Shown here: positions 4,796 to 39,357 of the stretch, piece after piece
Layout: each line of letters begins with the position of its first letter
How positions within the stretch are numbered: position 1 is the stretch's first letter
Assembly: GCF_037042905.1 (NCBI RefSeq)
Contig: NC_087252.1
Span: 37,882,001 to 37,946,000, forward strand
DNA from: Lytechinus pictus
Lineage: Eukaryota
Direction: 5' to 3'
DNA: 64,000 nt
Notes under the pieces: model-generated
What the model was told of the DNA's origin: nothing
Database searches by the model: none
What the model saw: the letters and a program-made list of their open reading frames with translations, nothing else
Made by a program: the position numbers and the translations under genes

Positions 4796-5037
4796 TCAAG
4801 CTTCATGCCGCAGGAAGTTGTTGACAGTGTCAAGAAGGTTTCCGAACCCTTGGGCGATACCGCGGAAGTGGCCCGGACGCTGAGGGGGCTCTTCCGTTGG
4901 AGTTGGGTCATCCACCGCGGTCCCGTCGTCATCTTTAGCTTCTCGTAGTCTCTTCACCTCCTCGTTGCTCACACAGACCCAGCTCTCGCCGAAGTCAGCA
5001 TGGGCGATGTCGGATCGGCTGGAGAGCTGTGATGGTC
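4796..5037 (-). CDS. Ig receptor gene A, last coding exon (GPSQ...DFGESWVCV...FGNLLDTVNNFLRHEA*)
   Basis: Acceptor ctgtctccag; GC-rich coding-like sequence open in phase 1 to TGA at 4798-4796. Total CDS 1431 nt = 476 aa + stop. Confidence 0.85.
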
Positions 5038-5098
5038 CTGGAGACAGGTTGGAGTGAAAGGAATAGAATGGTTTTTATTGATGACAACAATTATTGAC

Positions 5099-5765
5099 AA
5101 GAGGTTAGCAATGTGTGGGGGTCGTGGGTTTTCATGTGGAAAAGGAAGAAGAGGAAGAAGAAGAGGAGGAGGAGGAGGAAGAAAAGGAAGAAGAGGAGAA
5201 GGAGGAGGAGGAAGAAGGAGAAGAAGAAGAAGGAGAAGAGGTTAGTAATGTGTGGGGGTCGTGAGTTTTCATGTGGAAAAGGAAGACGAGGGAAAAGGAG
5301 AGGAAGAAGAAGAGGGGGAGGAAGAAGAAAAGGAAGAAGAGGAGAAGGAGGAGGAGGAAGAAGAAGAAGAAGAAGGAGAGGAGGTTAGTAATGTGTGGGG
5401 GTCGTGAGTTTTCATGTGGAAAAGGAAGAAGAGGAAGGAGAGGAAGAAGAAGAAGAGGAGGAGGAAGAAAAGGAAGAGGAGAAGGAGGAAGAACATGATG
5501 AAGAAGAAGAAGAAGGAGAAGGAGAAGAGGTTAGTAATGTGTGGGGTCGTGAGTTTTCATGTGGAAAAGGAATAAGAGGAAAAANNNNNNNNNNNNNNNN
5601 NNNNNNNNNNNNNNNNNNNNNNNNNNNNNNNNNNNNNNNNNNNNNNNNNNNNNNNNNNNNNNNNNNNNNNNNNNNNNNNNNNNNNNNNNNNNNNNNNNNN
5701 NNNNNNNNNNNNNNNNNNNNNNNNNNGAGGAGGAAGAAGATGAAGAAGAAGAAGAAGAAGAAAAA
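5099..5765. repeat. Tandem repeat of ~140 bp (GAGGTTAGTAATGTGTGGGGGTCGTGAGTTTTCATGTGG + GAA/GAG tract), interrupted by a gap
   Basis: Units at ~5101, 5238, 5381 and 5527; N gap at 5585-5726. Confidence 0.9.
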
Positions 5766-6450
5766 AGATCTGCTGATACCAGCATCTAATTTGGCTAAGA
5801 AAATCTGGTGAACAATCGCAGACATTCCGTAGTTTGCATATGGGTGTGAAGGGCCCGGGAAAAGTGAAATAGATAATCAGAACAAGAGGTATATATTTGT
5901 CATTCAACTATTTCCACACCACATTTACTTGGTAAATTAGCAAATTCGCCATGAAACGAACTGACAATAATTATCATTCATAATGTAGGAACAAATAGCA
6001 CTGCACAATTTGTCTAGCTTTCTTTCCCCTTTCTTTTTCGAGGCCTCCATCAATTTCAAGCTCTAAGCTTAAGATGGAGGTCTCCCACATTTCAAAATGT
6101 AGTATGTCGATATATACATATATATATATATATTTTCTTTCTTTCTTTCTGCTATGTGTTTTAATAATAAAAGAAGGAAATTTACCAGGTATAATTATAT
6201 TTCAATTAGAATGTATGTATGCATATGTTATTCACTATGTCATTTGCTTTTTGCTATGTTATGCTGAGAAAAAATGATTACACTTGTATATACTTTTTGT
6301 TAATGGAATGTGGAAATAAATAAATCTAATCAAATATCTCCAGACAAAATGAATTAAACCTTAACCTGATTCATCTGGGCATTTCATTCTTGAAGAGAGA
6401 GAGAACAAAAATCCAAACAGGTACGACATGATTTAAAACCCTTGACTTAC

Positions 6451-6540
6451 CTATCGAGACTGACTTGCTATCTTCCCTGTCATCTTTGCTCAACAATTCT
6501 TGGGACTGCTCCTCATCTTCTGAACTCATCCCGTCTTCAT
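6451..6540 (-). CDS. Ig receptor gene A, exon 7 (acidic, DEDGMSSEDEEQSQELLSKDDREDSKSVSI)
   Basis: Acceptor ttgcag, donor TAG|GTAAGT; 90 nt, phase 1-1. Confidence 0.85.
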
Positions 6541-6897
6541 CTGCAAGTAACCAAAATCAAACATTGTCCCTTTATTTACCCTGTTAATTGAAATACGTAA
6601 CAATAGCAATGGAAGGCACTGTGTAAGAATGTCTATATAATCATGATCCCCAAATATGAAAAACAAATAACATGTATACCAGTCTTCCCTGCTAGCCAAG
6701 AAATAGAAACAAATTTCCAGAAACGGGAACGTTCTTAATCTTCCTATTAAATAATAGTCTAGTTTTTTTCACAGAAATAAGAACACACGGGTTAAAATGT
6801 ATGTTTTCCCTTTCATCCGAAATAGGAATATTCCCATTATTAGGAAAAGTGGCAGGTATATTCATGACTTAAATCGAAGAGGTTACACAATTATTAA

Positions 6898-7500
6898 AGG
6901 ACAAGTCCACCCCAACAAAAACTTGATTTGAATAAAAAGAGAAAAATTTAACAAGCATAACACTGAAAATTTCATCAAAATCGGATGTAAAATAAGAAAG
7001 TTATGACATTTTGAAGTTTCGCTTCATTTCACAAAACAGTTATATGCACATCTCGGTCGGTATGCAAATGAGGGAACTGATGACATCACTCACTCACTAT
7101 TTCTTTTGTATTTTATTATATGAAATATGAAATATTTTGATTTTCTCGTCATTGTCATGTGCAATAAAGTTTCATTCCCCCCTGAACACGTGGAATTCCA
7201 TTATTTTAACATTTTGTGCTTCAGGCAAGGAGGTCCTAATCTTCAAATTCGTAAAAATTGAAATATTGTATAATTAAAACAATAAAAAACAAACGAAATA
7301 GTGAGTGAGTGACATCATCGACTCTCTCATTTGGATGTAACTGGCTCGTTCATATAACTATTTTATTAAAAATAAGCGAAACTTTGAAATGTCATAACTT
7401 TCTTATTTTACATCCGATTTTGATGAAATTTTCAGCATTGTGCTTTTCTGATTTTTCTCTATTGATTCAAATCAACATTTTTCTGAGGTGGACTTGACCT
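6898..7500. mobile_element. TTAA-flanked non-autonomous DNA transposon (Kolobok-like MITE), family 1
   Basis: TTAA|AGGACAAGTCCACC ... GGTGGACTTGACCT|TTAA with long imperfect inverted arms. Other copies at 2195-2788, 8816-9405, 21200-21778, 24796-25395 and 45785-46402. Confidence 0.85.
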
Positions 7501-7882
7501 TTAAAAAAAGATGTTGGTTGAAGCATGGACCTATAGGTCCATGGTTGAAGCAAAATGTATTGCTCTGTAAAGTATTATATAATTTCTTGAACTGCGGGAA
7601 ATTTAAGCTGCCTATACTAGCTCGTTGCACGCTTTGAGTTAGAAAATGCAGAGGCGGTCGTTATAGATGGCTACAAAAACATAGTAGGCTAATATAACAT
7701 AAGCACATCCTGATGAATGTATTCATTCAAATTTCCATCATATAATTTGAAACATTAATGAATGTTTTTTTTAAAAACATTAGTCACCCAGTTTCTACAG
7801 CTACAAATCAATATTCAATATGCATGAAATGACTTAAGACTTTTGAAGAAGTGGGCAAATGACCCGTGACCTATGACCTTAC

Positions 7883-7963
7883 CTTCGAGCGGTTCTGGAA
7901 TATCTGTCTGTGTTCCTTCGTTAAGTCTGGTCTCGACCGGGGGCTCTTCTACCACTACTGAAA
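7883..7963 (-). CDS. Ig receptor gene A, exon 6 (VSVVVEEPPVETRLNEGTQTDIPEPLE)
   Basis: Long pyrimidine tract + cag, donor AAG|GTAAGG; 81 nt, phase 1-1. A second in-frame AG lies 6 nt downstream. Confidence 0.85.
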
Positions 7964-8815: not shown

Positions 8816-9405
8816 AGGACAAGTCCACCCCAACAAAAAGTTGATTTGAATATACAGAGAAAATCTAACAAGCATAACACTAAAAATTCCATCAAAATCG
8901 GATGTAAAATAAGAGAGTTATGACATTTCAAAGTTTTGCTTAATTTAACAAAACAATTATATACACATAATGGTCAGTATGCAAATTAGGAGACTGATGA
9001 CGTCATCCACTCACTAATTCTTTTGTATTTTATCATATGAAATAGGGAATATTCTATTTTTCTCCTCATTGTCAAGTGAATCAACGATTAATTTATCCCT
9101 GAACATATGGAATGAGCATTGTTTTATACTATATGATTCATTCAAGTTGGTCCTTATTGTCAAATCTATAAAAATGAAATATTGTATAATTCAAACAATA
9201 AAAAACAAAAGAATAGTGAGTGAGGGACATCATCGACTTTCTCATTTGAGTTGTGCATATCACTGTTTTGTGAAAAATAAACAAAACTTTAAAGTGTCAT
9301 AACTTTCTTGTTTTACATCCGATTTTGATGAAATTTTCAACGTTTTGCAAGGTTGATTTTTCTCTATTTATTCAAATTAACATTTTTCTGGGGTGGACTT
9401 TACCT
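8816..9405. mobile_element. Kolobok-like MITE family 1 copy
   Basis: AGGACAAGTCCACCCC ... GGGGTGGACTTTACCT. Confidence 0.8.
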
Positions 9406-9498
9406 CTAATACTAACCAGTGCCAAACAAGTTTGTCTTTGTTTTTGGTCGTACTTACATCCTATTACACCATCACAGGGATAGTGTTTCACAAAACTG

Positions 9499-9764: not shown

Positions 9765-10467
9765 CTGGTAGTTAGGTTACGCATGAATTTAAACACGGCT
9801 GAGATTCTCAGTCACTTGATTCCCATTAACCAATGTTTTACTTTTATTATTTTTATTGAAAACTAAATAAAACAAAACATATTTACAACTTCGCACTTAG
9901 GTGATATAACATAAGAAAGAACGAGAACCCATTAACTTAAGTTGAAATCCGTTCCTTTGGGAGTGAAATTCTAGTTGCATGTGAATAGGAATTTGGAGCA
10001 AAAGTTCTTATTAGTCCAAATTTTAATTAGGTTAAAAGAAATTCATCCCTCCTAAATGTTAAAACGATTTTTTTTTTGGTGGGGAGGGGGGTATCTAAGA
10101 ACAGCGAGGTCAAATTCGTCCGTGTATATATATAGTCGGGAATAAAATACGAAAAAAATTATGAAACGACTCCAGCCAGTTCCCTGGTTAAGGTGCCAGT
10201 TGTCACAATATAGCTAAGCTGGAGGACATTTGCATAAGTCTACTAATAGGATACCAAAATACATCTTGCGACTCACTCATCTTATTTCTATGACCTATGT
10301 GATGGCGAAAGGACTTCCCGTTCCTTTCCAAAAATACAAAGAACACAGCTGACCGACATGGTATTCATTCTTTGTTTTTATAAAACAACCTTAAAAGTTT
10401 GAAACCATTCGGAGGTTTAATGACGGGAAACAGGAAAGGATTCACGTATAATGGCTGATAGCCTCAC

Positions 10468-10509
10468 CTGGTTCTAAAGTGTAGTGATTGTTTTCTTTTG
10501 GACGAATGT
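10468..10509 (-). CDS. Ig receptor gene A, exon 5 (42-nt cytoplasmic micro-exon DIRPKENNHYTLEP)
   Basis: Strong acceptor tttttttctctcgttatag and donor CAG|GTGAGG; phase 1-1, open frame. Confidence 0.7.
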
Positions 10510-11305
10510 CTATAACGAGAGAAAAAAAGTAGAAACTCATCATTTAAAAGATAAGTTGTTTATGTTTATGAGGTTAAAGAATAGGCCAGTTTTATATGAA
10601 CCAGCTTTGAGTATATCATATATTCGTATAGGGTCAGATGGTGAAAGCATGGCTGAAATGAATTATGGGTGTCTGCAATGTACTGTGGTAACATACCGGC
10701 CGCTAACTAAGAAATAAGAAACAAAAGAGTGAAGTGATTTACTGCTAATGTATTCAACGAGGAAGATAAGAGGAAAACGAATTAAAATCACAATTAAAGG
10801 TTTAAAAGTTAAAATCTGTTGATTTGCCTACATGCAATTTCCAAAATAAAAGCGCTTCCACCACATGGTTAATGTGTTAATGTTTACAAATGAGTAATAT
10901 GCATGTTCTATGTACGCACTAGCGAATACTAGCTTTTAGGGTCCAATTAGCTTGCCTTTAATGACGATGAAATAATTCAGGCCCAAATTGCCTTGAGCAT
11001 GCGTTTGATAACTACTATACTACGGTCCGCGAATGGGCCAACACTGGCCAGCGGGTTTATAGTGACTATCATCCCATGGAGAAATATATAACACAAAATC
11101 CAAAAACCAAAAAAAAAAAAAAAAAAAAAAACCGTCGCAAGGAAAATATTAATGGCAACTAATTACACCACTAAAATACAAGCAGAAAGGATGAATATGT
11201 GATAAAAATTTCAAATTACCCATCAGTCAATATAACTACTATAAGATGGATACTATAGTATTAGTATACAGTAATTACATTCACAATTTTACATGAACCT
11301 TAGAA

Positions 11306-11756
11306 TAGACCAGTTCGTAGTTACTCATGGACAATTTTAGTCAAATGACCTTTCATTTCTTTCATTATGATAGGCAGATTTCAAAGCAAGATATTACGTA
11401 AGCTTGCCTTACATAGCAGGATGAAGAAATTGAATAGACCAGGTGACTAGAATAGCACACCAATGGACACTTTATGAAGGTATTTGTTGCATTCCTACTT
11501 TGAATGCATGTCATAGCATGTTGCACAATGTACTTGGCAAACTGTGAAATACCAGTCGTTCGTGGACGCCTTGTTGTTTTTTGTGGATGTAAATGAAAAC
11601 CACTATTCAAAAGAATATATGAATAATCAAGACATCAAAGTTGGTGCTTATCTCATTAGATTTTAAACCACCATGTCACGTTAGTATAAATGACCTTCCT
11701 CTGATCATGCGTAGAATCTTTTGATCATGCGCAGAAAGGAACTACGAACTGGCTTA
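11306..11756. mobile_element. Non-autonomous DNA transposon with TAG..TA termini (Academ-like)
   Basis: TAGACCAGTTCGTAGTT ... AACTACGAACTGGCTTA inverted termini. Confidence 0.6.
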
Positions 11757-13477
11757 TTGGCAGGTAACATCTTCATTATCAATCGTAGATGGCGTCATCT
11801 AATTGGTCAAATAATTTGTGTTAAGCATGATTTTAAAGCATAAGTATCCCATGTCCATAGCTTTCCCATAAATAACTTAATGATATTGATTAATCATTCC
11901 ATGAGCATTAAATTCAAAACATTGACCGGGAACCAATCAGAGCTGGTGTATCATTTGAAATTAATTTGAAACTGTGTCACTGGGTCCTGATTGGTGAACG
12001 CAGAGTATATATATATATATATCTCCCATTGTTCATATGGATGGAAGTTGTATTTTTAGGAATGCAAAACCTATACAATTGAATATTTTGGAAACACTGA
12101 TGCAGATCGAACTATAGTCTCCTTCCGTCACTAAACCAATGCAAATCAATAACATGTGGGTAATACAAGGATGCACTCTGACATCAAACAAGTCAAAATG
12201 ACTAGATTATTGGTCAGCGGGGTGTTACTGAGTCCATATATACATAGTCAGAAATGACCGTTTCCAAGTCAACTTCGACAAGAAATTAAAACTATATAGT
12301 TGAACCAAACTGACCTTTCATTTTAACCAGTTTGTTATAAGAGTCTGCAAGATAGGTTTTACGTTAATGACCTTCAAGCGTGAACACAGTTAATTGGCTA
12401 AAAAATCCGGGGGGGGGGGGGGACATGGCGTAAGCGGGGGGGGGGGGGGTATTTTTATGCGAGCAAGCGATTTTTTTTTTCCTTTTTTGAACTTTTACAA
12501 AATATGTTAACATAATTTTGTGATAGATTTTGACAGAATTTCCAACAAGGAATATCACATTTAAGTCCCAAGTGCATGAATATTGGATGGCTCATAATGG
12601 GATACCAGAAATATTCCAAGAGTTACATATGTTCGCAATCATGGTAAATATTGTTAAACATATAGCATATGAATGGGTAAGATAGTGACATGAAAATTAT
12701 ACTCCCGCATGGCTTTATGGATGATAACGTACAACTCGAAATAAAGATATCATTTGATGCCAAAATACTCTACATGAAATTAAGAACACGGCATCAAACA
12801 TGGTCATATGATAAAAGAACTGAAAAATGAAAACGACATCACATATTCTTGAGATAAAGAAATCATCATAAAATATACAAAACTGACATTCTGGCAAATA
12901 AATTTTGATCATCTTCCCTCATATATAAAGCTATAAAATGATAACATATTTTGCGGGAATATACCGGGCACCATACAAGTTCGAAGATAAAATATTAGTT
13001 ATGATTTTCAGAAAGTTCATTCGAAAACATGGCAATGTTGATTCCAAAAATCATCTTTCAAATTTTGCACGCAAAGGGGGCCTTGAACGGAAGAGAGATA
13101 AAACAAAACAAATTAATAGAATCATTTTCGATATCGCCAAGCAAGATAATAATTAAAAAGAGGATTGCCTTGATTCATGTCTAGTGCCCCATTACGGCGG
13201 ACACATTTGCATCTTATTTTATAAGTTAACGGAGAGCCTTTTTTTAAGTCAGTAATGATTGTGGTCAATTTTGGTCGAAAAATTGGGATAAAGCTTTCGT
13301 GATGAACGTGTGAGTGGGATCAGTTTCAAACTGTTAGTCCATTTTGGAGCTGTGTGAGGGTGGTTCATAACTATATAGTGGTCCCACAGTGGTTAGACAG
13401 TTCCTAAGACTCGATTTAGTTTCATAAGACGAGTCCTCACTCCCTCATCTCAGGTGTAAGAAGGTTGCGACTCATGT

Positions 13478-13692
13478 CAAGGGCGAATTCAGAGTTTTCC
13501 AAGGGGGGGGGGGGGGCGGCGTTACATTTTCCAATGGAAATTTGAAAAAAGGGAAAAAAGTCCTAACTTTCAAAGGGGGGGGGGGGGCTACTCGGGTAAA
13601 AGCGGTATATTTACATCACAAATTTTGATTATGACTCTCAAAGGGGGGGGGGGGGGGCACGGGCCGGCCGTGTCCCCCTGGATCCGCCAGTG
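13478..13692. mobile_element. hAT-type MITE with 8-bp TSD
   Basis: TSD ACTCATGT on both sides; CAAGGGCGAATTC / GGATCCGCCAGTG termini; poly-G tracts. Confidence 0.8.
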
Positions 13693-13843
13693 ACTCATGT
13701 CATAAGTATAAAATATGCTTTTTTTCTGAGTCGTCCTGGTGTTTTTTTCTTGTTGAGATACAACATTTTATCAGCCCACCGACAAATATTTGTAGGCGGT
13801 TGGACTGATTTATGGAAAGGATATAATGATAATGCTCGCATAC

Positions 13844-14020
13844 CTGAACCCTTCTCCAGGTCAGTGAGCTGCTCGTGCTTCGTCTGTTCCCTCGATGCCG
13901 CTCTCGATCTCGACCTCTTTCTGCTCTTGAGTACGAGTATGACGACGATGAGGAGAACTATGAGTACTAACAGGATAGCGACGACGATGACAATGATGAC
14001 CACGAGTGGTGAGCCATCGG
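13844..14020 (-). CDS. Ig receptor gene A, exon 4: transmembrane helix and basic stop-transfer
   Basis: Acceptor ctctacag, donor G|GTATG; 177 nt, phase 1-1. LVVIIVIVVAILLVLIVLLIVVILVL followed by KSRKRSRSR. Confidence 0.92.
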
Positions 14021-15326
14021 CTGTAGAGGTTGAATGAGAATGAACAGTATTTCAAACGGATGTTCACCTGACAATACGATGGCTTTAGGAAAAGCAATAA
14101 ATAAATGAAAAAAAAAAAACAACGGGAAATATTGATGAAAATTCGATGAAACTCCGTGTCAAAGAATACAGAATTTATGAATTTTTGATTATTTTCATTT
14201 TGTGACGTTGCAGATTGGTCGTGTGAATTTTTTTTACAGAAATGTTTACAGAAATGTCCTTTTTCTGTCAGAGGATTGAAAGCGATTCTATTAATTGTGC
14301 GGGGATCGTCAGAAACATTATTACATACTCAATTCTTCAAGTAACAAAAAACAACCTTCGTTTATCATGCTCCATTTAAAAAAGAAATGAAAATAATTGA
14401 ATTCACATTAAACGATATACGGGGAGCTGCTCGCATACGACGCAAAAACACTCAAAACCTGTAAAAATTTATACCGCTTGTATTCTTTCATGGATTTTCA
14501 TCAAATCCCTTTTCCTCGACCTTTTTTTTGCTTTTACTAGAACCAGCTTATTGTCAGGGTGATCTTCCACTTTAACAATGGGATTATAACCCTTAAAACT
14601 ATTGTTATAAGGAGGAAACGTGATCCTAATGGTATGATTGGTTGTGCATGATACGTGACCCGTCATTTATCTGCCATAAAATAGATTTACTAATGACCGG
14701 TGATGAGCGGTCATAAGTAAAGCATAATGACCGGCCACGTTTTGTATTTTGTTTCGTTCTGTTTTAAACGAGGATGGAATATCAAGTAACAAGAATCTAC
14801 ATTACTCTTCTAAAAGATATCATGCACATTATTTTGCTAGGTCATTAGAATATTTACCCGAATTGTTAATGTTGAAACAGTCAAGACACACTCGGCCTGC
14901 TTCGGGCGCGTTAGAACTCTTCAAACGGCACCGCGTGCTTGTAATTCTTACTAACACCCCGGTAAATGTGTGTATTATTTGTATACTATATAGCGCCTGG
15001 AGTACCCTGCAAGAGTGGATAAGGACCTATCAAATATCATTCAATATCCACTCTCCAGCGTACCCAAGACGAAAATTGTAACTTTGATTGAAAAAAAAAA
15101 TTGTAGAAACAATATTCATTATCATGGTTATGTCTATTCTTAGGCTAAATGATATCTATATTGTGTGTGTTTTTTTATTTAACCACCGATCGGAACTGTT
15201 ACACAAATATTGTAAAAGTAGGCTAACCGATTTATCCTCGAATATTTGGTAAAAGCAGTTTGAACATATTATACTAAGGTGAATGGTAGGAATGTCGCCC
15301 TTCGATTATTTTTGTAATGATAATAC

Positions 15327-15674
15327 CTTCTACTCCTTGGACGGCGACTACGCTCCATCTGTCCCCCGAGACGGCTTCTCCGCTAACATTACATGAAAAC
15401 TCCTGTCTCTCAAGGCTAGCTATGACTTCGAATGTCACAGACATGCTCTGTGTTCCATCAGAGTCATTTGTCAACGTTCTGTAACTTAGAATATCACTAT
15501 GAGAATTGTTCGTCCATCTTAGATCCACCAGCGGTCGAAATCCAGACATCTTGCACGTTAGGTTTAGACTCGTCCCAGCCTCTTGTTTGATTACACATGT
15601 GTTGTTCCTACGTTCAACGTTTTCATGGCCATTTGCACATTCTGGAATAAAGGGATATGGCTCCTTTGGAGCGG
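15327..15674 (-). CDS. Ig receptor gene A, exon 3: C1-like Ig constant domain with an extra N-terminal Cys pair
   Basis: Polypyrimidine+acag acceptor, G|GTATT donor; 348 nt, phase 1-1. YPFIPEC..NTC..LNLTCKMSGFRPLVDLRW..NDSDGTQS..FSCNV; core Cys-Cys spacing 54. Confidence 0.92.
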
Positions 15675-15905
15675 CTGTATAGGAGGCAATAAGAAGAAGA
15701 GAGCGTGTGTGAGAATGAGATCAATTAATCTACATTCGAGCGTGCACTCTGGGACATTAATTATTTTAAGTATTAATTACCTGTATCTGTTTATCATCCC
15801 CTTCTTACAATTAATGTGAGATAAGAATACATCATTATAATTCACTACGTTATTAGCCCGTATGATCTATCGTTGTTTTCTCTCAAAAATTGTTATACTG
15901 TCTCT

Positions 15906-16302
15906 CACTAGCGTACCTACGGGGGGGGGGGGGGGCAGACTGCCCCCCTGACGAGTCACAACCCATGCAAGGGACATATAACTGCCCCCCCTGACGAGTC
16001 TTGAAGACTTTTTTTTATTTTTATTATTATTTTTTTTTGCTTGTCAAATTTTTTTATGGTACGAAATCCTTTATTATTTTGTGGTTGAAGACTTTTTTTT
16101 TTTTATTGCTTGTCAAATTTTTTTCTGGTACGAAATCCTTTATTTGTGGTTGAAGGCCTTTTTTTTTTTTTTTTTGCTTGTCAATTTTTTTGGCGGACGA
16201 GATCCTTTATTTGTGGTTGAAGACCTTTTTTTTTTTTTTGCTTGTCAATTTTTTTGGCGGACGAATTTGCCCCCCCTGTGGAAAATCCTAGGTACGCCAC
16301 TG
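15906..16302. mobile_element. hAT-type MITE with 8-bp TSD
   Basis: TSD CTGTCTCT on both sides; TIR CACTAGCGTACC / GGTACGCCACTG; internal poly-G and tandem repeats. Confidence 0.85.
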
Positions 16303-16395
16303 CTGTCTCTATAACAATAAAATTACAGGCTATTTCATTCTCTAATCATCAATATTCATCTGAAAAGGTACATGACTTGTTGCTAATATACTTAC

Positions 16396-16776
16396 AAAGA
16401 ACACGAATAGTACTGGCATTTTGATGACCCTTGGGGGCGCCAAATAAAATCACTTTACAGACGTACGATAGCCCCTCGTCCTCTATCGTCGGGGGCCTGT
16501 GTAGAACCAACGACCTGTTCACTGAAAGACTAAAGTTCCCGCTCTCGATTCCCGATCCCGATACCGCATCCTTGAAGACTTTCACGATGGTTTTTAGTGA
16601 GGGAGCCTCCCCTTCCTCCTTCTGCTCCATGCGGCTCCAGGAGAAGGCGTATATCCGCTCTCCGTCCTGGAGCCGTACATCGCACGGGATGGATTGGTCT
16701 TTCTGGTGGAGCCATAGCGATACTGTACCCTGGGTGATGACCTCCAGTGCTGATATTCGCTCGCACATCAGGGAAG
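16396..16776 (-). CDS. Ig receptor gene A, exon 2: V-set Ig domain
   Basis: Acceptor ..ccccacag, donor T|GTAAG; 381 nt, phase 1-1. IPC..FSW..SLVL..EDEGLSYVC with 75-residue Cys-Cys spacing. Confidence 0.92.
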
Positions 16777-17686
16777 CTGTGGGGGTAGACCAGAAAGATT
16801 ATTTATGATACGTTTAAGACATACAGAGTACGCATCTAAGTGTTAACAGATTTAGTATTACCCCGGTCATCAGATTCCATCAGTCTTTCCCCACACACAT
16901 CCTCCACTCCCAGGGAGTATTCCAACCAGTCGCCTCCGAGGTGCACACGAAACTAGACAAGCTATACAGCGATTTTCACATTCTAACGGGTACCCATTTA
17001 ACACCTGGGTAGAGAGTGGCATGGTGTGGATTGATGCCTTGCCAAAGGACGCGAGGCTGCGATGGGATTCGAACACACGACCCTCTGATTACAAGGCGAT
17101 ATTTAGAACCACTATAGGTCCGCGGCTCTAAAAGGTGAAATAGCTGGCAGCTTCAGATTTGTTGCTATTTTGGCCAGGAGTTGTAAAGGTTGATCCGCCA
17201 GCCGCTGATCTCCGAATACCGGGGGGGGGGGGGGGGGGGGGGTGAATAATTAAGAAGAAGCTGTTTAAAATTGATGACAGAGATGGTGAACAATATTTAT
17301 TGACCGTCATCATTATAGGCATGAAAATCAGGTGAGGAGGAGAAATATATTTTTTTTCTGAATATTATGTAAACATCTATCACAAGATTGAATCGTAATA
17401 AAAACGTAAAAATCTTTGCTCGCTATAAAGTAGATATTTTAATGAAAGAAGGGTAGCAGCTATACCAAAAGCCCCCGCAACATGTCAAGTCCAGATCCTG
17501 GCAAGTTAGCAATTAAGTTGGAGTCTTTAGCAAGCGAAACTAAAATCATTTAAAGATTACAATGTATGCTATAGTACTCGTTTCACGCGTTGTATTATAA
17601 GGCCTATCATAATTGACCATAATAATGATGAAAATAAATGGTTATTGCAAAGTGCTACACTGTAAAAAAATGTTGGGTAAAATCTT

Positions 17687-18102
17687 GGTTACACTTCGTA
17701 ATTCCGAAGGTTCGTAATTCCGAAACACGTAAATTGCCTATACCTCGATGTTCGTTAATCCGAAAACGCAAAAGGGTTCGTTAATCCGAACGTTTGTGGT
17801 GTTATTCCGCAGGTTCGTTATTCCGAAGGTTCGATAGTCCGAAAACGAAATAAGGTTCGATGTTCCGAAGGTTCGTTAATCCGAAAACGAAATAAGGTTC
17901 GTTGTTCCGAAGGTTCGTTAATCTGAAAACGAAATAAGGTTCGTTAATCATTTCGTTTTCGGACTAACGAACCTTCGGGATTACGACCCTTATTTCGTTT
18001 TCGGGCTAACGAACCTTCGGAAATACAAACCTTCGGAATAACGAACCTTCGGAATATCCGAACCTTCGGAATAAAGAACCTTCAGAATTACGAATGTATG
18101 CG
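17687..18102. mobile_element. Foldback-type element made of inverted 16-bp repeats, nested in CAC-MITE 17658-18335
   Basis: 8-bp TSD AAAATCTT on both sides; TTCCGAAGGTTCG repeats on the left, CGAACCTTCGGAA on the right. Confidence 0.8.
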
Positions 18103-18496
18103 AAAATCTTTACCACCACGAGGGTAATTATGTGTCCAATCAATTCGGTTAGTATTTTACCCAATGCGGGAAGCATATTGTCTAGTAAGGTTAAACATAA
18201 AACAGCAATTACTTTAGAATGGGCAAAACTTTCATCACACTGGATAAATAAAAAATCTCAAAGGAAATGCCCAAAGTTGGTTGGACAAATAATTACCCTC
18301 ATGGAGCACTTTTACCCAATATTTTTTTTGGAGTGTAGATACAAAATGACGTCACCAGCTCTGTTCAGAGACGCATATTCCGACATAATTAAAAAAAGGG
18401 GTTAGAGAGTGTTAGGTTCTTGTGCCAATTACCTCATTAGGCACCCCCATATACACCCCAACACACACACACACCCTCACACACCTTCATCCCAGC

Positions 18497-18735
18497 CATG
18501 GCGTAATTTCCTTCGGCAAGAAATTTATCCACATTGTGCTGCACTTGACCCAGGTGCGGTGAATGGGTACCCGGTATGATTTATTCCTTGAACGCTTTAG
18601 CGCCTATTAATATGGCGGCTCAGCTACAGCCGGGGTAATAATATGATACCAAGTATCAGAGCGGAGTTAAATCATTATATGCACATAGTTACTGCGCTAT
18701 TATAAATGGACATATTATTATTATTTTTTTTATTA
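18497..18735 (+). mobile_element. tRNA-derived SINE (partial)
   Basis: Core GCTGCAC..ACCCAGGTG..GAATGGGTACC and (ATT)n tail, shared with 42165-42350 (+), 40050-40285 (-), 43262-43530 (-) and 16857-17100 (-). Minus-strand copies show a B-box (GTTCGAAT/GTTCAAAT). Confidence 0.7.
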
Positions 18736-21199
18736 CACGCAAACAAAGAGGAACCACCCTTACACCGAGTGCCTCCTTTCGTAACAACAACTAAAAAAAA
18801 AACAGTTTCGCTTATTTTGCCCTGTTCTAATCCCCTTCCATTTTTCTTTCCTTCTCATTTTATTCACAAAAATCAAGAGGGAAAAATCATTTCCAAATCG
18901 AATCTCTCGGACCTCCCCAAGAATGTGCTCGTTCGTCTTTGTCTGACGAGCTACAAAGAAGGGTCACGGGGTCACCTATCTATTGAGCTCAGCTTTTTTT
19001 TTCTTTTGGCTCAATTTTCTTTTTGTGTCCACAGATTCTCGACTACCCTTTTATCAGCATAAGTTGAAATTGTGTAGATATATCAAATAACCCCCAATAT
19101 GCCGTTTGTTCGAGCCACTTATACAATTTGAATTGGGATTGGAAAAGGAGGAAGAGGGTTGGTGGAACAAAGAACATTCCACTCCTAAGTTGATTGATGT
19201 ATTTCTGAGCCAGAGACAAAGAACACGCAGTGGATTTATGGAAACAAGCCGGTATATATATATACTCTCGAGTAAAATGGCTTGTTATGAATTATGAATA
19301 TAGTTTATACCACGCGGGTGACAATATATAGAAGTCGATATTTTTATGTATAGACAATTAGACATGAGGCGAGTTTTCGTCAGGGGGCGGGGGGGGGGGA
19401 TAATTACAATATATTTTGGGGCTTAGGATACTAATTGTTTTGGAATTCAGGTTCATGGTCGTAGTTAACGGACCTCTGATCATTTTGGAATAAGATTAAT
19501 TCATTCGACTATTAGTAGAGTCCTAAATTTTATTGTCTTTATTACCTGTGTTTTGTGTGTCTGCCAATGGGAGGTCCCAGGGGTATCCTTGGCAGGGTAT
19601 GGGGAGGGGGGGGGGGGGGGGGACAAAAATGTCATATTTTCTCAACTGGATAATAGAAGTGTTATGAGGTAGACCCCTCTTTTCCTTCATATGTTCATTC
19701 TCTCCCCCCTCCTCTCCCTCATTTTAATGTTTTCTTTTCTTCTTCAGCCCCCCCTCGTTTATGTTTCTTAATTGAAAATCAGAAGGTGAGACTGTCCCTT
19801 GTCCCCTGGTGGCGCAGCCCGCATGTGCCCCCCTTCCCCTCAATCTCCCCTCCCTTTACATCTCTTCCACATTCCGTCACCAGTTCATTCATGTGGGGGG
19901 GGGGGGTAAAGATTGTACAGTAATTATCTGATATCAAATCATATTGCATACTGCTACTTTAACGTTTTGGTAAAAGAAATAGGGGGAGAGTAATTCTGCC
20001 CATTAAAATCACTGAAACTTAAATATAAGTGAATAAATCAAATCGGCAATTTATGGTGAGGAAATAGTCTTTCGCATAATAAAGGTGCAGGCCTACAATA
20101 TTTGGACAACTCTCTGTCTCCATGTGCTAGCTCTCTTTACAAAGAGGTACCGTATGTTTTTTTATAGTATGATTTTGACTTAGTCTAAATTGTGCTTTCC
20201 TGCTTTCGCTCGCACAAGGCAAATTTTGTCTGTTGAGCACAAAAGTCTGTCTTTACCATGTTGACGCTGTTACGGTCCCCTTTTCATGAACATGCAGGAC
20301 AATACAATAACCTCTTTCACATCATCTAATTACATGATCCTTCCCCCAGCCAGCCTTCTGTAATCCAGGCACGGGAGACACGGTATCGTGAACGAAATCA
20401 CGCATCATGTCTACGTCACACTACGTCACAATGCAGTTATCTCGAGAGGTCATGTTCGTGATTAATCGTATTGGTGATTATCGTAAGTGAAGACTCGTGA
20501 TTCAATTTCCTCTGGATTCGAAAAGTGACGAACATAACATTTTATCAGAGAGAATACCCTGGGCCCGTAACACAAAGGTTAGCAATTGATCGTAAGCTTG
20601 ACTTTCACGATTGATTGTACATTGTAGCCAATGGAATCAATCGTAGAAAAATGTTCTACGATCATTGCTAGGTTTTGTGTTACGGGCCCCTGGTCTTACA
20701 AGTTCGAAGCTATCTTGCGACTGTCTTGTGAGAAATTCCCAATCATTTTGATTGTTATGAAATTACATAAATCAAAGCTCATTAAGACTCCGTTGAGATT
20801 ATTTGATATAGATTTTTTTTCTGCTGTTACCTATAGGCCTACATGTTCTTAGAACTGAATCAATATTTTCTAAACCATTTCATTTGTTAATGTTAATGAA
20901 AGCAACAACAGTTAGGTGAAACAAGGAATATCGCCCATAAATCATTTTTTCCTTTCTTTGAAATCATTTCCTGATAATTTCTTTTAATTAGGCCGATTCG
21001 AACGGAAACTTGTTTTCGGTGTTTTTTTACTACAGGATGTTAGTTATACAAAACACACAGAAAGAACCGACCATACATTCATTAAAATTGGTGGGAAGCC
21101 ATTTTTATGCAAATGGAATGAATATAAAGCTCTGAAACCATACAGTAACCTCGAGGGTGACACGACATTTTGCTCCTGCGACAATTGATCTGGGCTTAA

Positions 21200-34751: not shown

Positions 34752-36414
34752 GACATAATGTATATGTGACGTAATTTATTTTCCCTCGATTGAATATTAG
34801 AGGGTAAATGACAAATCATGTGATTGCAAAGTGCTTGTTCACAACAAGGCTATTGTAGTACCATAGAGCTATTAACAAAATACGGTGTATTATCTACCCT
34901 ATTTTATTTTCTCCGTGTTTTCGCGCGAATAATTACAGTTGTTGATCTCGGGCGTGTCTAGTCTTGTTCCAAGGATGACCAAGGCTTCAATTATTATGTC
35001 GACAAACAAAACCATCTCCAAACAATAATAACAGCAAACAATCACACAATCTGTTCGTTATACCTCCCTCAGGTGAATAGATGACTTAGGGGCCGCAAAG
35101 AGTGCATAACGATGGAGGTAATTGTATGCAAATAATTGGTGGAGGACAATAGCCGGTCCGTTATAACGTAATCGCTATTCATCCAGAAATAACAAACTTG
35201 GAGACAACACGATGGAACAAAACAAGGAACGGTAAAGTACAAAAACGTGTTAGTTTGTTCATGCAGGCACGAAAAGGGGTCAAGAGTATTAGGGGTTATT
35301 TTTTCGCATGGAAATAATCAAAAGTTTCTGCAATTTTGCAGAAAATGATAATAACGAGGATGATGCAGAATACGACCAATACGCTGACTGAGCTCATCGG
35401 TATATAGGCCTAACATTTTCTTTTGAGTGTAGGCCTATGTGGTTCGCGTGTATATACTTGTAATTATTGAACAATACCTGAACTACACTTCGAAATAATA
35501 GCCAATGCCAAATTACCAATCCATTCTGATGTAACGCTTTGCGTGATGATCATAATTCTCTATTTTAACATCCAAAAACAACCCAAGTATTCCACTGGTC
35601 CCTTCCCTGTGAATACATATATTATTACATCTTACGTAACACTCACGAATCCGTATTTAGTACGCTGTGGAAAAACTAGCTAGTCTACTGTGCATACAAT
35701 TCACTGGAGTTAAGGGTCTGAATGTGCAGCCTATATATGTCTTGTGTACTGAAGGCCTCATATGCTAGTCTTTGCGTGGAGACCCACATGTTAATCAAAG
35801 TTTCAATCAGGGTCTGTGTCTGCAGATTAGAGAAAAAACAGTCTTTCCCACATAAGGAAGGGGGTTGCGGGACGAGAAAGATTTAAAGAATGAAAGAGAG
35901 AGAGAGAGAAGAGAGGAGATAAAGGGCGGCGGGGGGGGGGGCTGTATCTATAGACTACCCCATTCTCGGTCCAGTAGTTCTGGGTGAACCCATCGGGGGC
36001 ACACAAAAATCAACAAGTTTATCCAACCGAGCAAACAATAGACTCACAGCTGTTCGTGTCTTTGTTCGGGCGTGAAAGTCTCATCTCATTTGGTGCGGTG
36101 CGGTAGGTGTATTTGCTTATTGAATTTCGAAACGGGCATTTACATTTGCGAAATAGGAGAAAAAAAAATAACGACACGAGTGTGTGAGTCACTGCAGTGC
36201 AATATGGAGGGTATTATACCTCGAGTTTCGCAATATGCTGAAATTTAGGCAAGATTCGGAGAGGAAACAATAAATAATGATTCTTGGGAAACCGTAACCG
36301 AAGTCTTTGGCTTGAAAATCAACCATCTTCCAATAAGATCAATTCTTATTTGTAACCGGCAAACAGGCTTAACAGGTCATAATTGGAAAGACAGTTTCAA
36401 CCCCAACCAACCCG

Positions 36415-36653
36415 CACTGTAAAAACTGTGGTGTTAAAACTGACACCAGTGGGTGTTAATAGAGGACCACACCCTCTGGTGTTAAAATTACACCCTAGAG
36501 ATTGAATATAACACCAAAGAGTGTACATGTAACAACCAAAGGTGTTGCAATAACACCTATAGGTGCTAAACTAACACTGTCAATTTAACACCGGTGTAAA
36601 ATAACTGGTGTGGTACTCTATGTACACCGGTTAACACCGCAGTTTTTGCTGTG
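36415..36653. mobile_element. CAC..GTG MITE, copy of 58216-58454
   Basis: Highly similar along its full ~240 bp. Confidence 0.8.
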
Positions 36654-39287
36654 TGCATGTGTACCTAAAAGAGAGGAAGAGAGAGAAAGAGAGAGGGAGA
36701 GGGGGAGAGAGAAATCCTTTATGTATAAATATGTAAATTTTCCCCTTTGAACCTAGTCATACTATATATAATAACAGGATCCAGTTCTACTATATCAAAA
36801 TGGTCACAGTGTGGAAAATATGGAAGTCCCGTCTCTTTCATGCCAACTTGATTACGTAATAGCATTTATATCTGGGAGTGGAGCACAAACGTTAATGGCA
36901 TTAATTCACTAATTTTCTGTTATTATGACAAAAGGTTCATTGCAATTTCTGTTAGCACAAAGTTAGTGTAAAGTTCACATACCCTCATGCCAATTAGAAT
37001 TCAATCCCACGGCAGCTAACATTGTGGTTAGAAAGCCCTGGAATGTTGGCACCAAAATATTCTAATTCGATGTTCAAGGATAAACATTAAAACAAAAAAA
37101 GAAATTGGTAGTCGATTTTTGTTCCGACAATAACTTCTGGATTCTTTTCCGCGATTAGATCTGGGGTCGGCAACACATAGCTTAGCAATCATCGCAGACG
37201 GTAGACTTATTTTGTTAGATTGATTGCATTGATTACAAAGTACAATTAATCTTTACAAAAAATCAAGCATACGATTAATCAGTAACCTTTGTGTTACAGA
37301 ATCCAAGTTGTTGTGGATGAAAATTAGAAGGTTTTTATTTTTATTACGGTATTGCATTCACAATTTCGCTGCACTGCAATCGCATTGAGCTTGCGGTCGC
37401 ATTCATTCGAATAAAATATGGATACTTCTGGAGACAAGACTAGCAGTAGCACGGAAAATCATTATCATTACTTCATAGGTCGAAACCAGTACTTAATAAG
37501 GACGTCACAAAGAGCATGATTAATAACATGCTTTAAAGGTCTATTCTCCGGGCTGAGAATATTTATATCTAAATAGATAGAGTAAAATTCACAGAGCAAA
37601 ATGCTGAAAATTTCATCAATTTCTGACTAGCGAAGTAATTGAACTACAAAGTGTAGCAATATATTGTGAGAACAGTTATATACACGTCGTCAATAATATT
37701 CATTAGATCGGCTGATGATGTCACATCTCCACTTTCCCTTTTCTTATGTTATTACATGAAATCATAATTGTTTCATTTTTTCATTGTATGAATGATATGT
37801 ATCCCTTGTAATGATTTAAGTTACAGCAATGAATATCTAATGCACTAAATCAGTTGTCATTCCTTTTTTTTAGTTCTTGAAGGTAAACATTTAATTTCAT
37901 ATAATAAAATACAAAAGAACAAGTGGGGATATGACATCATCAGTTTTCCATTGAATATTCATGAAGACATGCCTAGAACCGTTTCACCGGAATAATTCAA
38001 ATCTTTAAATTGCCATGACTTTGTTATTCCTTCTCCGATTTTTAAATCAAATTTTCAGTGTTTAGTTTGTCTGATTTTTCTTTATCAGTTCAAATCATAT
38101 TATTGCCAGCCTTTTATCATATGATAATGTGATAAAGCTCAAATGAGGTACATTGATAATATATTTTGTCCATGTCTTACATTTTCCCGGGACACAATAT
38201 AATACAATTTCTAAAACATATACACTAAAGGACACAATCCTCTTATATAATAGCTCCTGCTACATTTACACTATATACGGAAATATTCACCTTCATAGTG
38301 TCAACACTAACAGCACAATATGATTTTGAGGAAATATGATTTGCAAAACCAATGGCTACTATATCATATTATATATCAGCATCAGTGAAGCTCTATATAG
38401 GCAATAGGCGTTAAATAATAGTCCCCATTTTTTTTTTTTTTGGGGGGGGAGGAGGTTTATGTTGGGCTCCTCAGTCGATTTCGACTATTGGGGGGGGGGG
38501 GGGGTTAATTACAGCTACATTTTATTCAAGTCTTGATATTTATTCTATAATTCCTAGAAACACGACTGACAACACTTGGAATGAATAGGTAATAAAATAC
38601 CAACTCATGTAATAGGAGAAAGGGGTACATCAAGCATCTCAGCTCAGTGCTGAGGAAGATGATAAACTAGATACATTACATGTAGTCCATTGATGACATT
38701 TATGTAACTAAAAACCCCAGTTCCTCTCAAATGAGGCCAAAATGATCATCATAGAGGTATCTCACTTGTACCTCCATGAAGATACTGAGCACAAATTCTG
38801 ATGGACGACATCGGTTGAATGTAAAGTGGATGCACCCTACATCATAATACGGCTATATGGTAAAGTCATTAACACATGCGTGACCTGCTAACAAGCAAGG
38901 CCGAGGCATTCAAGTTATGCATATGTGTCAACCATGATGATGCACAATTGAATACAATAGAACAGGATCATGAATTATAATAAGATGAAAATGTAACAAA
39001 AACATTGCCGATAGGATTGATGATGGAAACTCATGCGCGCACAGGTTCTTTGTGTGCACTTTGTTACGGCAACACTGCTCTGTTTATATCTCCGTTAATA
39101 TACTACTCGGGTTCTGTCATTCAGGTATTGATTGATTGAAACTTGATAATCCACTAAATGCTGTTGTCTATACGCAGATATACACGATACTCCCGTGAAC
39201 TTAGGAATGGTGATAGCTCATAATTAGGTTAAACAAAAACAGGATACAGCAATAACAAAGGATAACGGCATCATCATCATAACTTAC

Positions 39288-39357
39288 CTCCGACATAGAT
39301 CATAACAAACATCCGCCACGAAATGAAGCTACATTTTAAAGAGGAGATTTCCGCCAT
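39288..39357 (-). CDS. Ig receptor gene A, exon 1 (start codon and signal peptide MAEISSLKCSFISWRMFVMIYVG)
   Basis: Kozak-like accATGG at 39357. 70 nt end in G|GTAAGT (phase 1) and join exon 2 in frame to give a continuous hydrophobic leader (...MFVMIYVG-A-SLMCERISA). A CpG-rich region lies upstream. Confidence 0.75.

What the first reader, a model, noticed from the sequence alone, without database searches (positions are those of the whole stretch)
4796..39357. Invertebrate V-C1-TM receptor with antigen-receptor/MHC-like constant-domain motifs
Seen: the eight exons splice in frame (all phase 1, one domain per exon) to leader-V-C-TM-tail. The second domain has LxCxxSGFxP, xW, N/SxDGTxS and FxCxV. 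Established: these are hallmark motifs of C1-set domains (Ig/TCR constant regions, MHC, beta-2 microglobulin, tapasin, SIRP), which are mostly confined to jawed-vertebrate immunity. It lacks the final His of the [FY]xCxVxH signature and has an extra Cys pair (YPFIPEC...NTC) ahead of strand B. Inference: a member of an echinoderm V-C1-like receptor family resembling the proposed pre-RAG ancestor architecture, with no enzymatic, death or NACHT domain in the tail.
Basis: partly seen in the sequence, partly recalled or inferred. Interest (0 to 1): 0.75.

Follow-up and report, generated by a model that had tools for sequence, protein, structure and literature searches.

The report
Sea urchin V plus C1-like receptor
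This is a real, expressed sea urchin gene for a small cell-surface protein with two antibody-type domains; the second carries sequence marks of the 'C1' type usually tied to vertebrate adaptive immunity, but similar sea urchin genes were noted in 2006 and common descent is unproven.

Summary
Eight phase-1 exons on the minus strand (39357 down to 4796) give a 476-aa type I membrane protein: leader, V-set Ig domain, second Ig domain, transmembrane helix and acidic tail.

- **Splicing:** RNA contigs and raw reads join V–C and C–TM at the predicted bases. The other junctions rest on Lytechinus pictus RefSeq models (98–99% identical) and on conservation in Strongylocentrotus and Diadema.
- **Gap:** the N run lies inside intron 7.
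- **Motifs:** every quoted motif is present.
- **For C1:** Pfam C1-set is the second domain's best hit (24.3 bits, cut-off 21). The best PDB sequence matches are IgG constant domains, SIRP and MHC.
- **Against C1:** the margins are small and the Ig/MHC signature fails. The predicted fold sits closest to domain 2 of Rst/SYG-1/SYG-2 (Kirrel–nephrin); true C1 domains tie with I- and C2-set.
- **Family:** this genome holds a near-identical second copy and at least 17 paralogous C-like exons, many beside V and TM exons. Nearly all share an N-terminal disulfide-stapled hairpin.

Sea urchin IgV–IgC1 transmembrane gene models were reported in 2006, so this is a new member of a known kind. Function and homology to vertebrate C1 remain open.

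The parts
39288..39357 (-). Exon 1: start codon (ATG at 39357, context ACCATGG) and hydrophobic leader, 70 coding nt; donor GTAAGT, phase 1
   Evidence: Sequence read. Maps to residues 1-23 of the L. pictus model P0059. The leader is conserved in L. variegatus, S. purpuratus and Diadema. The E1-E2 junction was not tested with reads.
16396..16776 (-). Exon 2: V-set Ig domain (Cys55, Trp70, Cys130; Cys-Cys spacing 75 aa), 381 nt, phase 1/1
   Evidence: Pfam V-set scores 16.3 bits here, below the cut-off of 26, but matches all 6 orthologues with best E 1e-6. The donor at 16396 is joined to 15674 in RNA.
15327..15674 (-). Exon 3: membrane-proximal Ig domain with C1-set-like motifs (LTCKMSGFRP, LRW, NDSDGTQS, FSCNV) and an N-terminal Cys163-Cys177 hairpin, 348 nt, phase 1/1
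   Evidence: Pfam C1-set 24.3 bits against a cut-off of 21. Model pLDDT 81. Both junctions are seen in RNA contigs and raw reads.
13844..14020 (-). Exon 4: short stalk, transmembrane helix (about 26 hydrophobic residues) and basic stop-transfer KSRKRSRSR, 177 nt, phase 1/1
   Evidence: The acceptor at 14020 is joined to 15327 in RNA. The Pfam hits are only TM-like ones.
10468..10509 (-). Exon 5: 42-nt cassette micro-exon (DIRPKENNHYTLEP) with a conserved Tyr; skipped in the predicted isoform X2 of both L. pictus loci (P0058, P0063) and absent from the S. purpuratus X2 model and one Diadema model
   Evidence: Only a trace of read depth in this bin, in one run.
7883..7963 (-). Exon 6: 81 nt, acidic tail segment with the conserved EGTQT..PEP stretch
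   Evidence: conservation shown.
6451..6540 (-). Exon 7: 90 nt, acidic Ser-rich tail segment
5585..5726 (.). Assembly gap (142 N) inside intron 7, next to a purine-rich low-complexity stretch (about 5050-5560)
   Evidence: Intron 7 runs 6450..5038. The protein models run straight from E7 into E8.
4796..5037 (-). Exon 8, coding part: 242 nt ending in the stop TGA at 4798-4796; holds FGESWVCV and the conserved C-terminal helix-like GIAQGFGNLLDTVNNFLRHEA
   Evidence: conservation as far as Diadema.
2790..4795 (-). 3' UTR, inferred only: the transcript contigs carry 2186 and 2461 nt downstream of the start of the TM exon, which is 1.7-2.0 kb beyond the stop if no further intron exists

Best explanation
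The locus is an expressed gene of the sea urchin Lytechinus pictus. It is one of two near-identical loci, which NCBI annotates as uncharacterised LOC129266568 and LOC129266657.

It encodes a 476-aa single-pass type I membrane glycoprotein with these parts:
- a signal peptide;
- a membrane-distal V-set Ig domain;
- a membrane-proximal constant-type Ig domain;
- a transmembrane helix;
- a 150-180 aa acidic cytoplasmic tail that is probably disordered and has no known domain.

The constant-type domain is an echinoderm-specific subtype. It has an N-terminal hairpin stapled by an extra disulfide, followed by a core that carries C1-set-like sequence motifs. Its predicted shape is nearest to domain 2 of Kirrel/Rst/SYG-1 and nephrin/SYG-2.

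Most likely mechanism: a cell-surface recognition or adhesion receptor. The V domain binds an unknown ligand. The C domain acts as a rigid spacer and possibly as a lateral contact surface. The tail recruits cytoplasmic partners through short conserved motifs, and alternative splicing of the 42-nt exon 5 adds or removes one Tyr-containing motif.

Shown: gene structure, transcription, domain types, family membership and conservation across echinoids.
Inferred: surface location, ligand binding, signalling through the tail, and any immune role.
For: - Gene model: eight AG/GT phase-1 exons giving 476 aa.
- RNA joins V-C and C-TM at the predicted bases, in two contigs and in raw reads.
- The product is 98-99% identical to L. 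pictus RefSeq models, 97.5% to L. variegatus, 73% to S. purpuratus LOC100888071 and 51-53% to Diadema.
- The contig length of 42,376,555 bp ties the window to the L. pictus assembly.
- V-set matches all six orthologues.
- C1-set is above the Pfam cut-off in Lytechinus, Strongylocentrotus and Diadema: 24.3 and 22.1, 21.3, and 30.8-31.3 bits.
- PDB profile hits are IgG CH, SIRP alpha/gamma and the shark UrIg2.
- C-domain model: pLDDT 81, with strands B, C, one strand before a tight DSDG turn, then E, F and G.
- Own genome: a second copy plus 17 paralogous C-like exons. V-like ORFs lie upstream in 12 and TM ORFs downstream in 9. The EP[YF]P..C...C hairpin is conserved.
- The sea star Patiria has two such domains in one protein.
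- The tail has no Pfam family and no relatives beyond the orthologues.
Against: - No experiment or expression context ties the gene to any function. Read depth is low, about 2 in a 6% sample of 20-Gb runs.
- Only two of the seven junctions were checked with reads.
- The two-domain model was poor (pLDDT 57), so the V-domain fold and the domain arrangement are unverified.
- The window's own V exon is below the Pfam V-set cut-off.
- Which sheet the strand between C and E belongs to (D or C') could not be read from the tool output.
Confidence: 0.7

Rival explanations
1. The second domain is a genuine C1-set domain sharing descent with the constant domains of Ig, TCR, MHC, tapasin and SIRP. Under this reading a V-C1-TM receptor already existed in the deuterostome ancestor and this echinoid family descends from it.
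For: - C1-set is the best Pfam family for the window's exon and, by 8.5 bits, for the Diadema orthologue.
- The top PDB sequence and profile hits are nearly all C1 domains: IgG CH1/CH3, SIRP alpha/gamma, IgE, IgA, UrIg2 and MHC-I alpha3.
- The only non-echinoid hit in two searches of 5.8 billion proteins was a coelacanth MHC class I chain.
- The alignment to CH3 runs through strands B to F with a shared DSDG D-E turn.
- Cys-Cys spacing is 54 and the Trp lies 13 residues after the first Cys.
- Paralogues carry G[FY][FY]PDI.L.F.
- The V profile weakly hits nectin-3/4, TAPBPR and TCR alpha V.
Against: - Per-domain E-values against PDB are only about 0.05-0.4, and the PDB is crowded with antibodies.
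- The Ig/MHC signature [FY]xCxVxH fails.
- S. purpuratus and every paralogue scanned that gave a hit score higher on Ig_3, ig or I-set.
- Marginal C1-set hits are frequent in invertebrate genomes (PMC12909245).
- The N-terminal hairpin replaces the straight A strand that defines C1 (PMC12051499).
Confidence: 0.22
2. The second domain is an ordinary adhesion-molecule Ig domain of the Kirrel/nephrin/nectin/B7 pool (Pfam I-set or CD80-like C2-set), and its C1-like motifs are retained generic features or convergence. Under this reading the protein is a homophilic or heterophilic adhesion molecule of embryonic, neural or epithelial cells rather than an immune receptor.
For: - The best structural matches are Rst, SYG-1, SYG-2, Neph1 and Kirrel1-3, found in four libraries.
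- After the echinoderm relatives, hits in the 1.84-billion-protein search include proteins named nephrin-like, SYG-2-like and KIRREL.
- The V profile's best PDB hit is nectin-3.
Against: - Pfam C2-set_2 scores only 15.4 bits (cut-off 21), below C1-set.
- Those large-database hits are multi-Ig proteins whose scores are summed over 3-8 stretches.
- The protein has two Ig domains rather than five to ten. Its tail matches no Pfam family, including any Kirrel or nectin tail family, and it ends in RHEA, which by my own knowledge is not a PDZ-binding motif.
- No orthologue was found outside echinoids.
Confidence: 0.3
3. The model is an annotation or assembly artefact: a pseudogene, a chimera across the gap, or a collapsed haplotype copy.
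For: There is an assembly gap within the span. A 98%-identical second copy lies 9 Mb away on the same chromosome.
Against: - The frame is open across all eight exons.
- Transcripts of 3.4-3.7 kb contain the exons.
- The gap is intronic.
- The protein is conserved across three echinoid genera, including the tail.
- The two copies differ by 6-13% in their introns, which I judge high for alleles (the allelic expectation is my own knowledge, not measured here).
Confidence: 0.02

Closest known systems
Sea urchin IgV set-IgC1 set transmembrane gene models (Hibino et al. 2006 and Rast et al. 2006, as summarised in PMC3308324)
   Same: [quoted passage not shown]
   Different: I could not read the primary papers, so I cannot say whether the S. 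purpuratus orthologue LOC100888071 was among those models. Neither the stapled N-terminal hairpin nor the tail appears in the review's one-paragraph summary, the only text on these models I could read.
Domain 2 of IRRE/Kirrel/Neph1/Rst/SYG-1 and of nephrin/SYG-2 (PDB 4of8, 4ofy, 4of3, 4ofd)
   Different: - Sequence identity is only 12-17% over the aligned residues.
- Pfam C2-set_2 is below its cut-off.
- Those proteins have 5-10 Ig domains and different tails.
- The extra Cys pair defines the echinoderm subtype; whether the Kirrel/nephrin domains carry one was not checked.
Vertebrate C1-set domains in V-C1 receptors: SIRP alpha/gamma, tapasin/TAPBPR, Ig heavy constant domains, MHC alpha3/beta2, beta-2 microglobulin
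   Same: - Best sequence matches.
- Shared features: the GF.P BC-loop motif, the strand-C Trp, the DSDG-type D-E turn, the [FY].C.V F strand and similar Cys spacing.
   Different: The signature His is missing, and the A-strand region is replaced by a stapled hairpin. Structure does not single these domains out, there is no evidence of dimerisation, and no orthology is detectable.
Sponge SAML and RTK 'EV-set plus C1-set' ectodomains (PMC11926128, PDB 8OVQ)
   Same: A non-vertebrate V-like plus C1-like tandem on a membrane protein, used to argue that C1 predates vertebrates.
   Different: The sponge case rests on crystal structures; this one rests on sequence scores and a model. No sequence link between the two was seen in any search here.
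B7 family and butyrophilin V-C ectodomains (CD276, PD-L2, B7-H6, BTN)
   Same: Two-domain V plus C ectodomain, a single TM segment and a signalling-poor tail. CD276, PD-L2 and B7-H6 appear among the structural hits, and Pfam C2-set_3 scores 18.1 bits.
   Different: All are below Pfam cut-offs, and no orthology is detectable.

Membership tests
Ig C1-set (Pfam PF07654; IgC1) | Score at or above the Pfam gathering cut-off (21 bits) | tested here: met
   Window exon 24.3 bits; L. pictus P0059 22.1; S. purpuratus 21.3; Diadema 30.8-31.3.
Ig C1-set (Pfam PF07654; IgC1) | C1-set outscores the other Ig-clan families | tested here: inconclusive
   True for the window's exon (by 2.9 bits over Ig_3) and for Diadema (by 8.5 bits). 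False for S. purpuratus (Ig_3, ig and I-set are higher) and for all 6 of the 9 scanned paralogues that gave any hit; the other 3 matched no family. C1-set matched 11 of the 20 family members.
Ig C1-set (Pfam PF07654; IgC1) | B-F disulfide, strand-C Trp and C1-type spacing, with the G-[FY]-x-P motif after strand B | tested here: met
   Cys191-Cys245 are 54 residues apart and Trp204 is at +13; the motif SGFRP is present. The domain aligns with CH3 across strands B-F with small gaps.
Ig C1-set (Pfam PF07654; IgC1) | Ig/MHC signature [FY]-x-C-x-[VA]-x-H (PROSITE PS00290, pattern recalled from memory) | tested here: not met
   The F strand reads FSCNVSG; Gly stands where His is required in all orthologues.
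Ig C1-set (Pfam PF07654; IgC1) | Seven-strand ABCDEFG topology: straight A strand, a D strand in the ABED sheet, no or minimal C' (definition in PMC12051499) | tested here: inconclusive
   The model has one strand (65-69) between C and E, followed by a 5-residue turn, plus a single bridge at residue 60. That fits a D strand, but sheet membership cannot be read from the output. The A region holds a helix turn and an extra hairpin rather than a straight strand.
Ig C1-set (Pfam PF07654; IgC1) | Nearest structural neighbours are C1-set domains | tested here: not met
Ig V-set (Pfam PF07686) | Score at or above the gathering cut-off (26 bits), with V-type Cys spacing | tested here: inconclusive
   The window's exon scores 16.3 bits, below the cut-off. 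S. purpuratus scores 32.5 and Diadema 27.5, both above it, and all 6 orthologues match. Cys55-Cys130 are 75 residues apart, which is V-like.
Antigen-receptor-type VJ domain | J-like F-G-x-G-T-x-L-x-V at the start of the G strand | tested here: not met
   The F strand is followed by [FS]GA.., an 8-9 residue loop and then STIRVL. There is no diglycine bulge motif, and the Phe is not conserved.
IRRE/Kirrel-nephrin adhesion family (Pfam C2-set_2 / I-set domains) | C2-set_2 at or above cut-off (21 bits), multi-Ig ectodomain, family-type tail | tested here: not met
   C2-set_2 scores 15.4 bits. The protein has only two Ig domains, and the tail has no Pfam family or outside relatives. Only the fold similarity is met.
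Echinoderm V-C-TM family with hairpin-stapled C domain (defined here) | An [EA]P[YF]P-x-I-x-x-C ... C hairpin ahead of strand B, one domain per phase-1 exon, a V exon upstream and a TM exon downstream | tested here: met
   19 exon hits in the genome. The motif is aligned. V and/or TM ORFs lie beside most loci. A Patiria protein carries two such domains.
Sea urchin IgV-IgC1 transmembrane models of Hibino et al. 2006 | Being one of, or orthologous to, the published S. purpuratus gene models | not testable with these tools
   Only the review summary was readable. Rast et al. 2006 is not held.

The most novel reading that the evidence does not exclude
The echinoderm hairpin-stapled C domains are true sister lineages of the vertebrate C1-set. 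On this reading a V-C1-TM receptor family, related to the stock that gave tapasin, SIRP, nectin-type and antigen-receptor chains, already existed in the deuterostome ancestor and expanded independently in echinoderms. This would overturn the common statement that C1 arose with jawed vertebrates.
Probability: 0.2. Interest if true: 0.75.

Novelty: new member of a known kind. Interest (0 to 1): 0.42.

Why it matters
[quoted passage not shown] A 2025 structural paper claimed the first non-vertebrate C1-set, in a sponge (PMC11926128). In that setting, a conserved and expressed echinoid V plus C1-like receptor, sitting in a family of at least 18 loci with a shared and easily recognised domain subtype, gives a concrete target. 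Solving one ectodomain structure would show whether C1 topology exists in a non-chordate deuterostome.

The present evidence does not show descent from, or to, the vertebrate antigen-receptor or MHC constant domains. The existence of such sea urchin gene models has been known since 2006. No function is known.

Tried and rejected
- **Two-domain V+C model:** mean pLDDT 56.9, too poor to search, so neither the V fold nor the V-C arrangement was compared with TCR, B7 or SIRP.
- **Tail:** the Pfam scan and the 5.8-billion-protein search on residues 300-476 found nothing beyond the orthologues.
- **Wider family search:** a full-length profile search added only fragments and one coelacanth MHC-I chain.
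- **Literature:** Rast et al. 2006 (PMC3707132) is not held. Papers on Kirrel/SYG structures gave no statement on the set type of domain 2.
- **Earlier scan notes:** a word search gave nothing relevant.
- **Reads:** Exon 5 showed only trace depth.
- **YxxL/ITIM reading of exon 5:** rejected, because the Lytechinus sequence is Y-T-L-E (Leu at +2) and no YxxL register is shared with Diadema.
- **Gap hiding an exon:** rejected, because the E7-E8 protein sequence is continuous in all models.


Full report
**What is there.** The finding lies on the minus strand. Motif and frame scans placed the quoted motifs in one open frame at 15277-15720, with a V-like frame at 16352-16798 and a TM frame at 13695-14003. 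Reading the boundaries gave canonical AG/GT sites, all in phase 1. Joined, the eight exons give 1431 nt, which is 476 aa and a single terminal stop:
- E1 39357-39288
- E2 16776-16396
- E3 15674-15327
- E4 14020-13844
- E5 10509-10468
- E6 7963-7883
- E7 6540-6451
- E8 5037-4796

The protein has eight N-glycosylation sequons, all in the ectodomain. Its Cys pairs are at 55/130 (V), 163/177 (hairpin) and 191/245 (C). The finding's end coordinates are the start codon (39357) and the last base of the stop codon (4796).

**The gap.** The N run at 5585-5726 lies inside intron 7 (6450..5038), next to a purine-rich low-complexity stretch. Homologous proteins run from E7 straight into E8 with no missing residues. 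The gap therefore does not affect the frame, and there is no sign of a hidden exon.

**Transcription.** Runs of the same species hold about 30% of the sampled words of 13800-16800, which equals the exon share. I laid two such contig sets and two raw RNA-seq runs on 10460-16459.
- The joints 15674/16396 (V to C) and 14020/15327 (C to TM) have minus-strand GT..AG ends.
- They appear in one contig per set (3366 and 3721 nt) and in 3+5 and 2+1 raw reads.
- Exon reads have the first mate on the + strand, which fits a minus-strand RNA in the usual stranded library.
- Depth is low.
- The contigs extend 274-354 nt beyond the V exon and 2186-2461 nt beyond the start of the TM exon, as expected for a leader exon with 5' UTR and for four tail exons with a 1.7-2.0 kb 3' UTR.
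- The E1-E2 junction and E4 through E8 were not tested with reads.

**Identity of the gene.** An exhaustive HMMER search of 1.84 billion representatives with the C exon found 57 proteins, only 7 of them at E ≤ 1e-10. The top one is L. pictus LOC129266568.
- The RefSeq models map exon for exon onto the window. Isoform X2 skips E5.
- A 98% identical C exon lies at C8:28.85 Mb. That copy matches LOC129266568 exactly in the C exon, so the window is probably the second locus, LOC129266657.
- The two copies are 87-94% identical in their introns, so they look like a recent duplication rather than alleles.
- Orthologues: L. variegatus LOC121419960 (97.5%), S. purpuratus LOC100888071 (73%) and Diadema antillarum/setosum (51-53%).
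- All of these are named 'uncharacterized'. No orthologue was found outside echinoids.

**The V domain.** Pfam V-set matches all six orthologues, with best E 1e-6. S. purpuratus and Diadema are above the cut-off, but the window's own exon scores only 16.3 bits. The 75-residue Cys spacing is V-like. Profile hits in the PDB are weak: nectin-3 at 7e-4, then nectin-4, TAPBPR, CEACAM1 and TCR alpha V. There is no J-like FGxG motif.

**The second domain, by sequence.** Pfam scores for the window's exon:

| Family | Bits | Cut-off |
|---|---|---|
| C1-set | 24.3 | 21 |
| Ig_3 | 21.4 | 30 |
| ig | 18.5 | 21.8 |
| I-set | 18.4 | 23.7 |
| C2-set_3 | 18.1 | 27 |
| C2-set_2 | 15.4 | 21 |

- The Diadema orthologue gives C1-set 31.3, next best 22.8.
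- S. purpuratus gives Ig_3 25.1, ig 24.6, I-set 22.2 and C1-set 21.3.
- Against PDB sequences, the single exon, the orthologue profile and the 20-member family profile all put C1 domains on top: IgG CH1/CH3, SIRP alpha/gamma, IgE, IgA, the shark UrIg2 and MHC-I. The one exception is multi-domain titin, which heads the family-profile list without any single stretch passing on its own. The per-domain E-values are modest and the PDB is rich in antibodies.
- The alignment with CH3 runs from strand B to strand F and shares the DSDG turn.
- The Ig/MHC signature fails at the His.

The C1 likeness is therefore real at motif and HMM level, but marginal. For calibration, one sponge genome has 162 proteins with Pfam C1-set hits (PMC12909245).

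**The second domain, by predicted structure.** An AlphaFold model of the exon with eight sequences reached pLDDT 81. It shows a short helix and an extra hairpin before strand B, then B, C, a single bridge, one strand, a five-residue turn, and E, F and G.
- Foldseek on the PDB, AlphaFold DB and the ESM Atlas agree that Kirrel/Rst-type domains lead.
- The tools do not expose coordinates, so I could not decide whether the strand between C and E is D or C'.

**The family.** The genome holds 19 matching exons. Seventeen are paralogues at 23-35% identity, mostly on chromosome C8.
- Within ±4.8 kb, V-like frames lie upstream in 12 loci and TM frames downstream in 9. This comes from a regex screen.
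- The paralogues share the [EA]P[YF]P-x-I-x-x-C...C hairpin. Many carry G[FY][FY]PDI.L.F, N.DG[ST]K and Y.C.AS.
- By Pfam the paralogues score best as Ig_3, ig or I-set.
- Diadema multi-domain relatives (V-V-V-C-C-C-TM) have C domains that Pfam calls C1-set.
- A Patiria miniata protein has two hairpin-bearing C domains.
- The AlphaFold DB search lists three entries in an accession series (A0A2G8…) that I recognise from memory as sea cucumber; one of them is named a NACHT-domain protein (the tool hides the organism).
- The best ESM Atlas match is an echinoderm cluster combining NACHT, V-set and ig.

**The tail.** It has no Pfam family and no relatives beyond the orthologues. It is acidic (41 Asp+Glu against 22 Lys+Arg in 177 residues). 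Its conserved islands are the Tyr in cassette exon 5, EGTQT..PEP, FGESWV and the C-terminal GNL.DTV.NF.RHEA. I do not read exon 5 as an ITIM or YxxL motif.

**Comparison with the literature.** A 2012 review citing Hibino et al. 2006 and Rast et al. [quoted passage not shown] Later texts still say that C1 is restricted to jawed vertebrates (PMC7916673) or was first seen outside vertebrates in sponges in 2025 (PMC11926128). The kind of molecule is therefore known, although little noticed. This gene is an uncharacterised member of it, with a domain subtype worth describing.

**Verdict.** This is a new member of a known kind and of moderate interest. Homology with vertebrate C1 and any immune role remain open.

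Noticed in passing
G000:C8:28848500-28858400 (L011), compared with window 10557-21194: A second copy of the whole gene lies 9 Mb away on the same chromosome. It is 98-99% identical in the V and C exons but only 87-94% identical in the introns. It matches RefSeq LOC129266568 exactly in the C exon, so this looks like a recent duplication rather than a haplotype copy.
   Followed up: partly
L012-L028 (G000 C8 at 2.1-2.2, 13.8-14.0, 18.4-18.5, 20.2-20.7, 23.7, 26.0-26.1 and 33.5 Mb; C1 at 24.26 and 24.31 Mb; C11 at 19.8 Mb): Seventeen paralogous C-like exons at 23-35% identity share an N-terminal Cys-stapled hairpin. Many sit between V-like and TM exons, and some loci have two V exons. Several carry G[FY][FY]PDI.L.F, which closely resembles the C1 BC-loop and C-strand motif.
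   Followed up: partly
window 63300-63670 (+): An open frame with V/I-type Ig features (…ISLRCAF…ITW…EDEGMFTC…) lies near the window's end. It is probably an exon of a neighbouring IgSF gene on the other strand.
   Followed up: no
window 11260-11860 and 15860-16460 (introns 4 and 2): RNA and contig depth is very high on both strands, with many variant letters and internal joints. This is typical of expressed interspersed repeats rather than of this gene.
   Followed up: no
ESM Atlas and AlphaFold DB neighbours of the C-domain model: The best shape match in the Atlas is an echinoderm cluster of about 864-aa proteins carrying NACHT plus V-set plus ig domains. An AlphaFold DB entry named a NACHT-domain protein also matches; its accession series looks like sea cucumber to me, from memory, because the tool hides the organism. 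Ig ectodomains of this type seem to be combined with NACHT in some echinoderm proteins.
   Followed up: no
window 10468-10509 (exon 5): A 42-nt phase-1 cassette exon with a conserved Tyr is present or absent in predicted isoforms of Lytechinus and among Diadema models, and is absent from the one S. purpuratus isoform seen (X2). This suggests a conserved splicing switch in the tail.
   Followed up: partly
window 5050-5560: A long purine-rich (GAA/GAG-type) low-complexity tract borders the assembly gap in intron 7. It may be the reason the gap exists.
   Followed up: no
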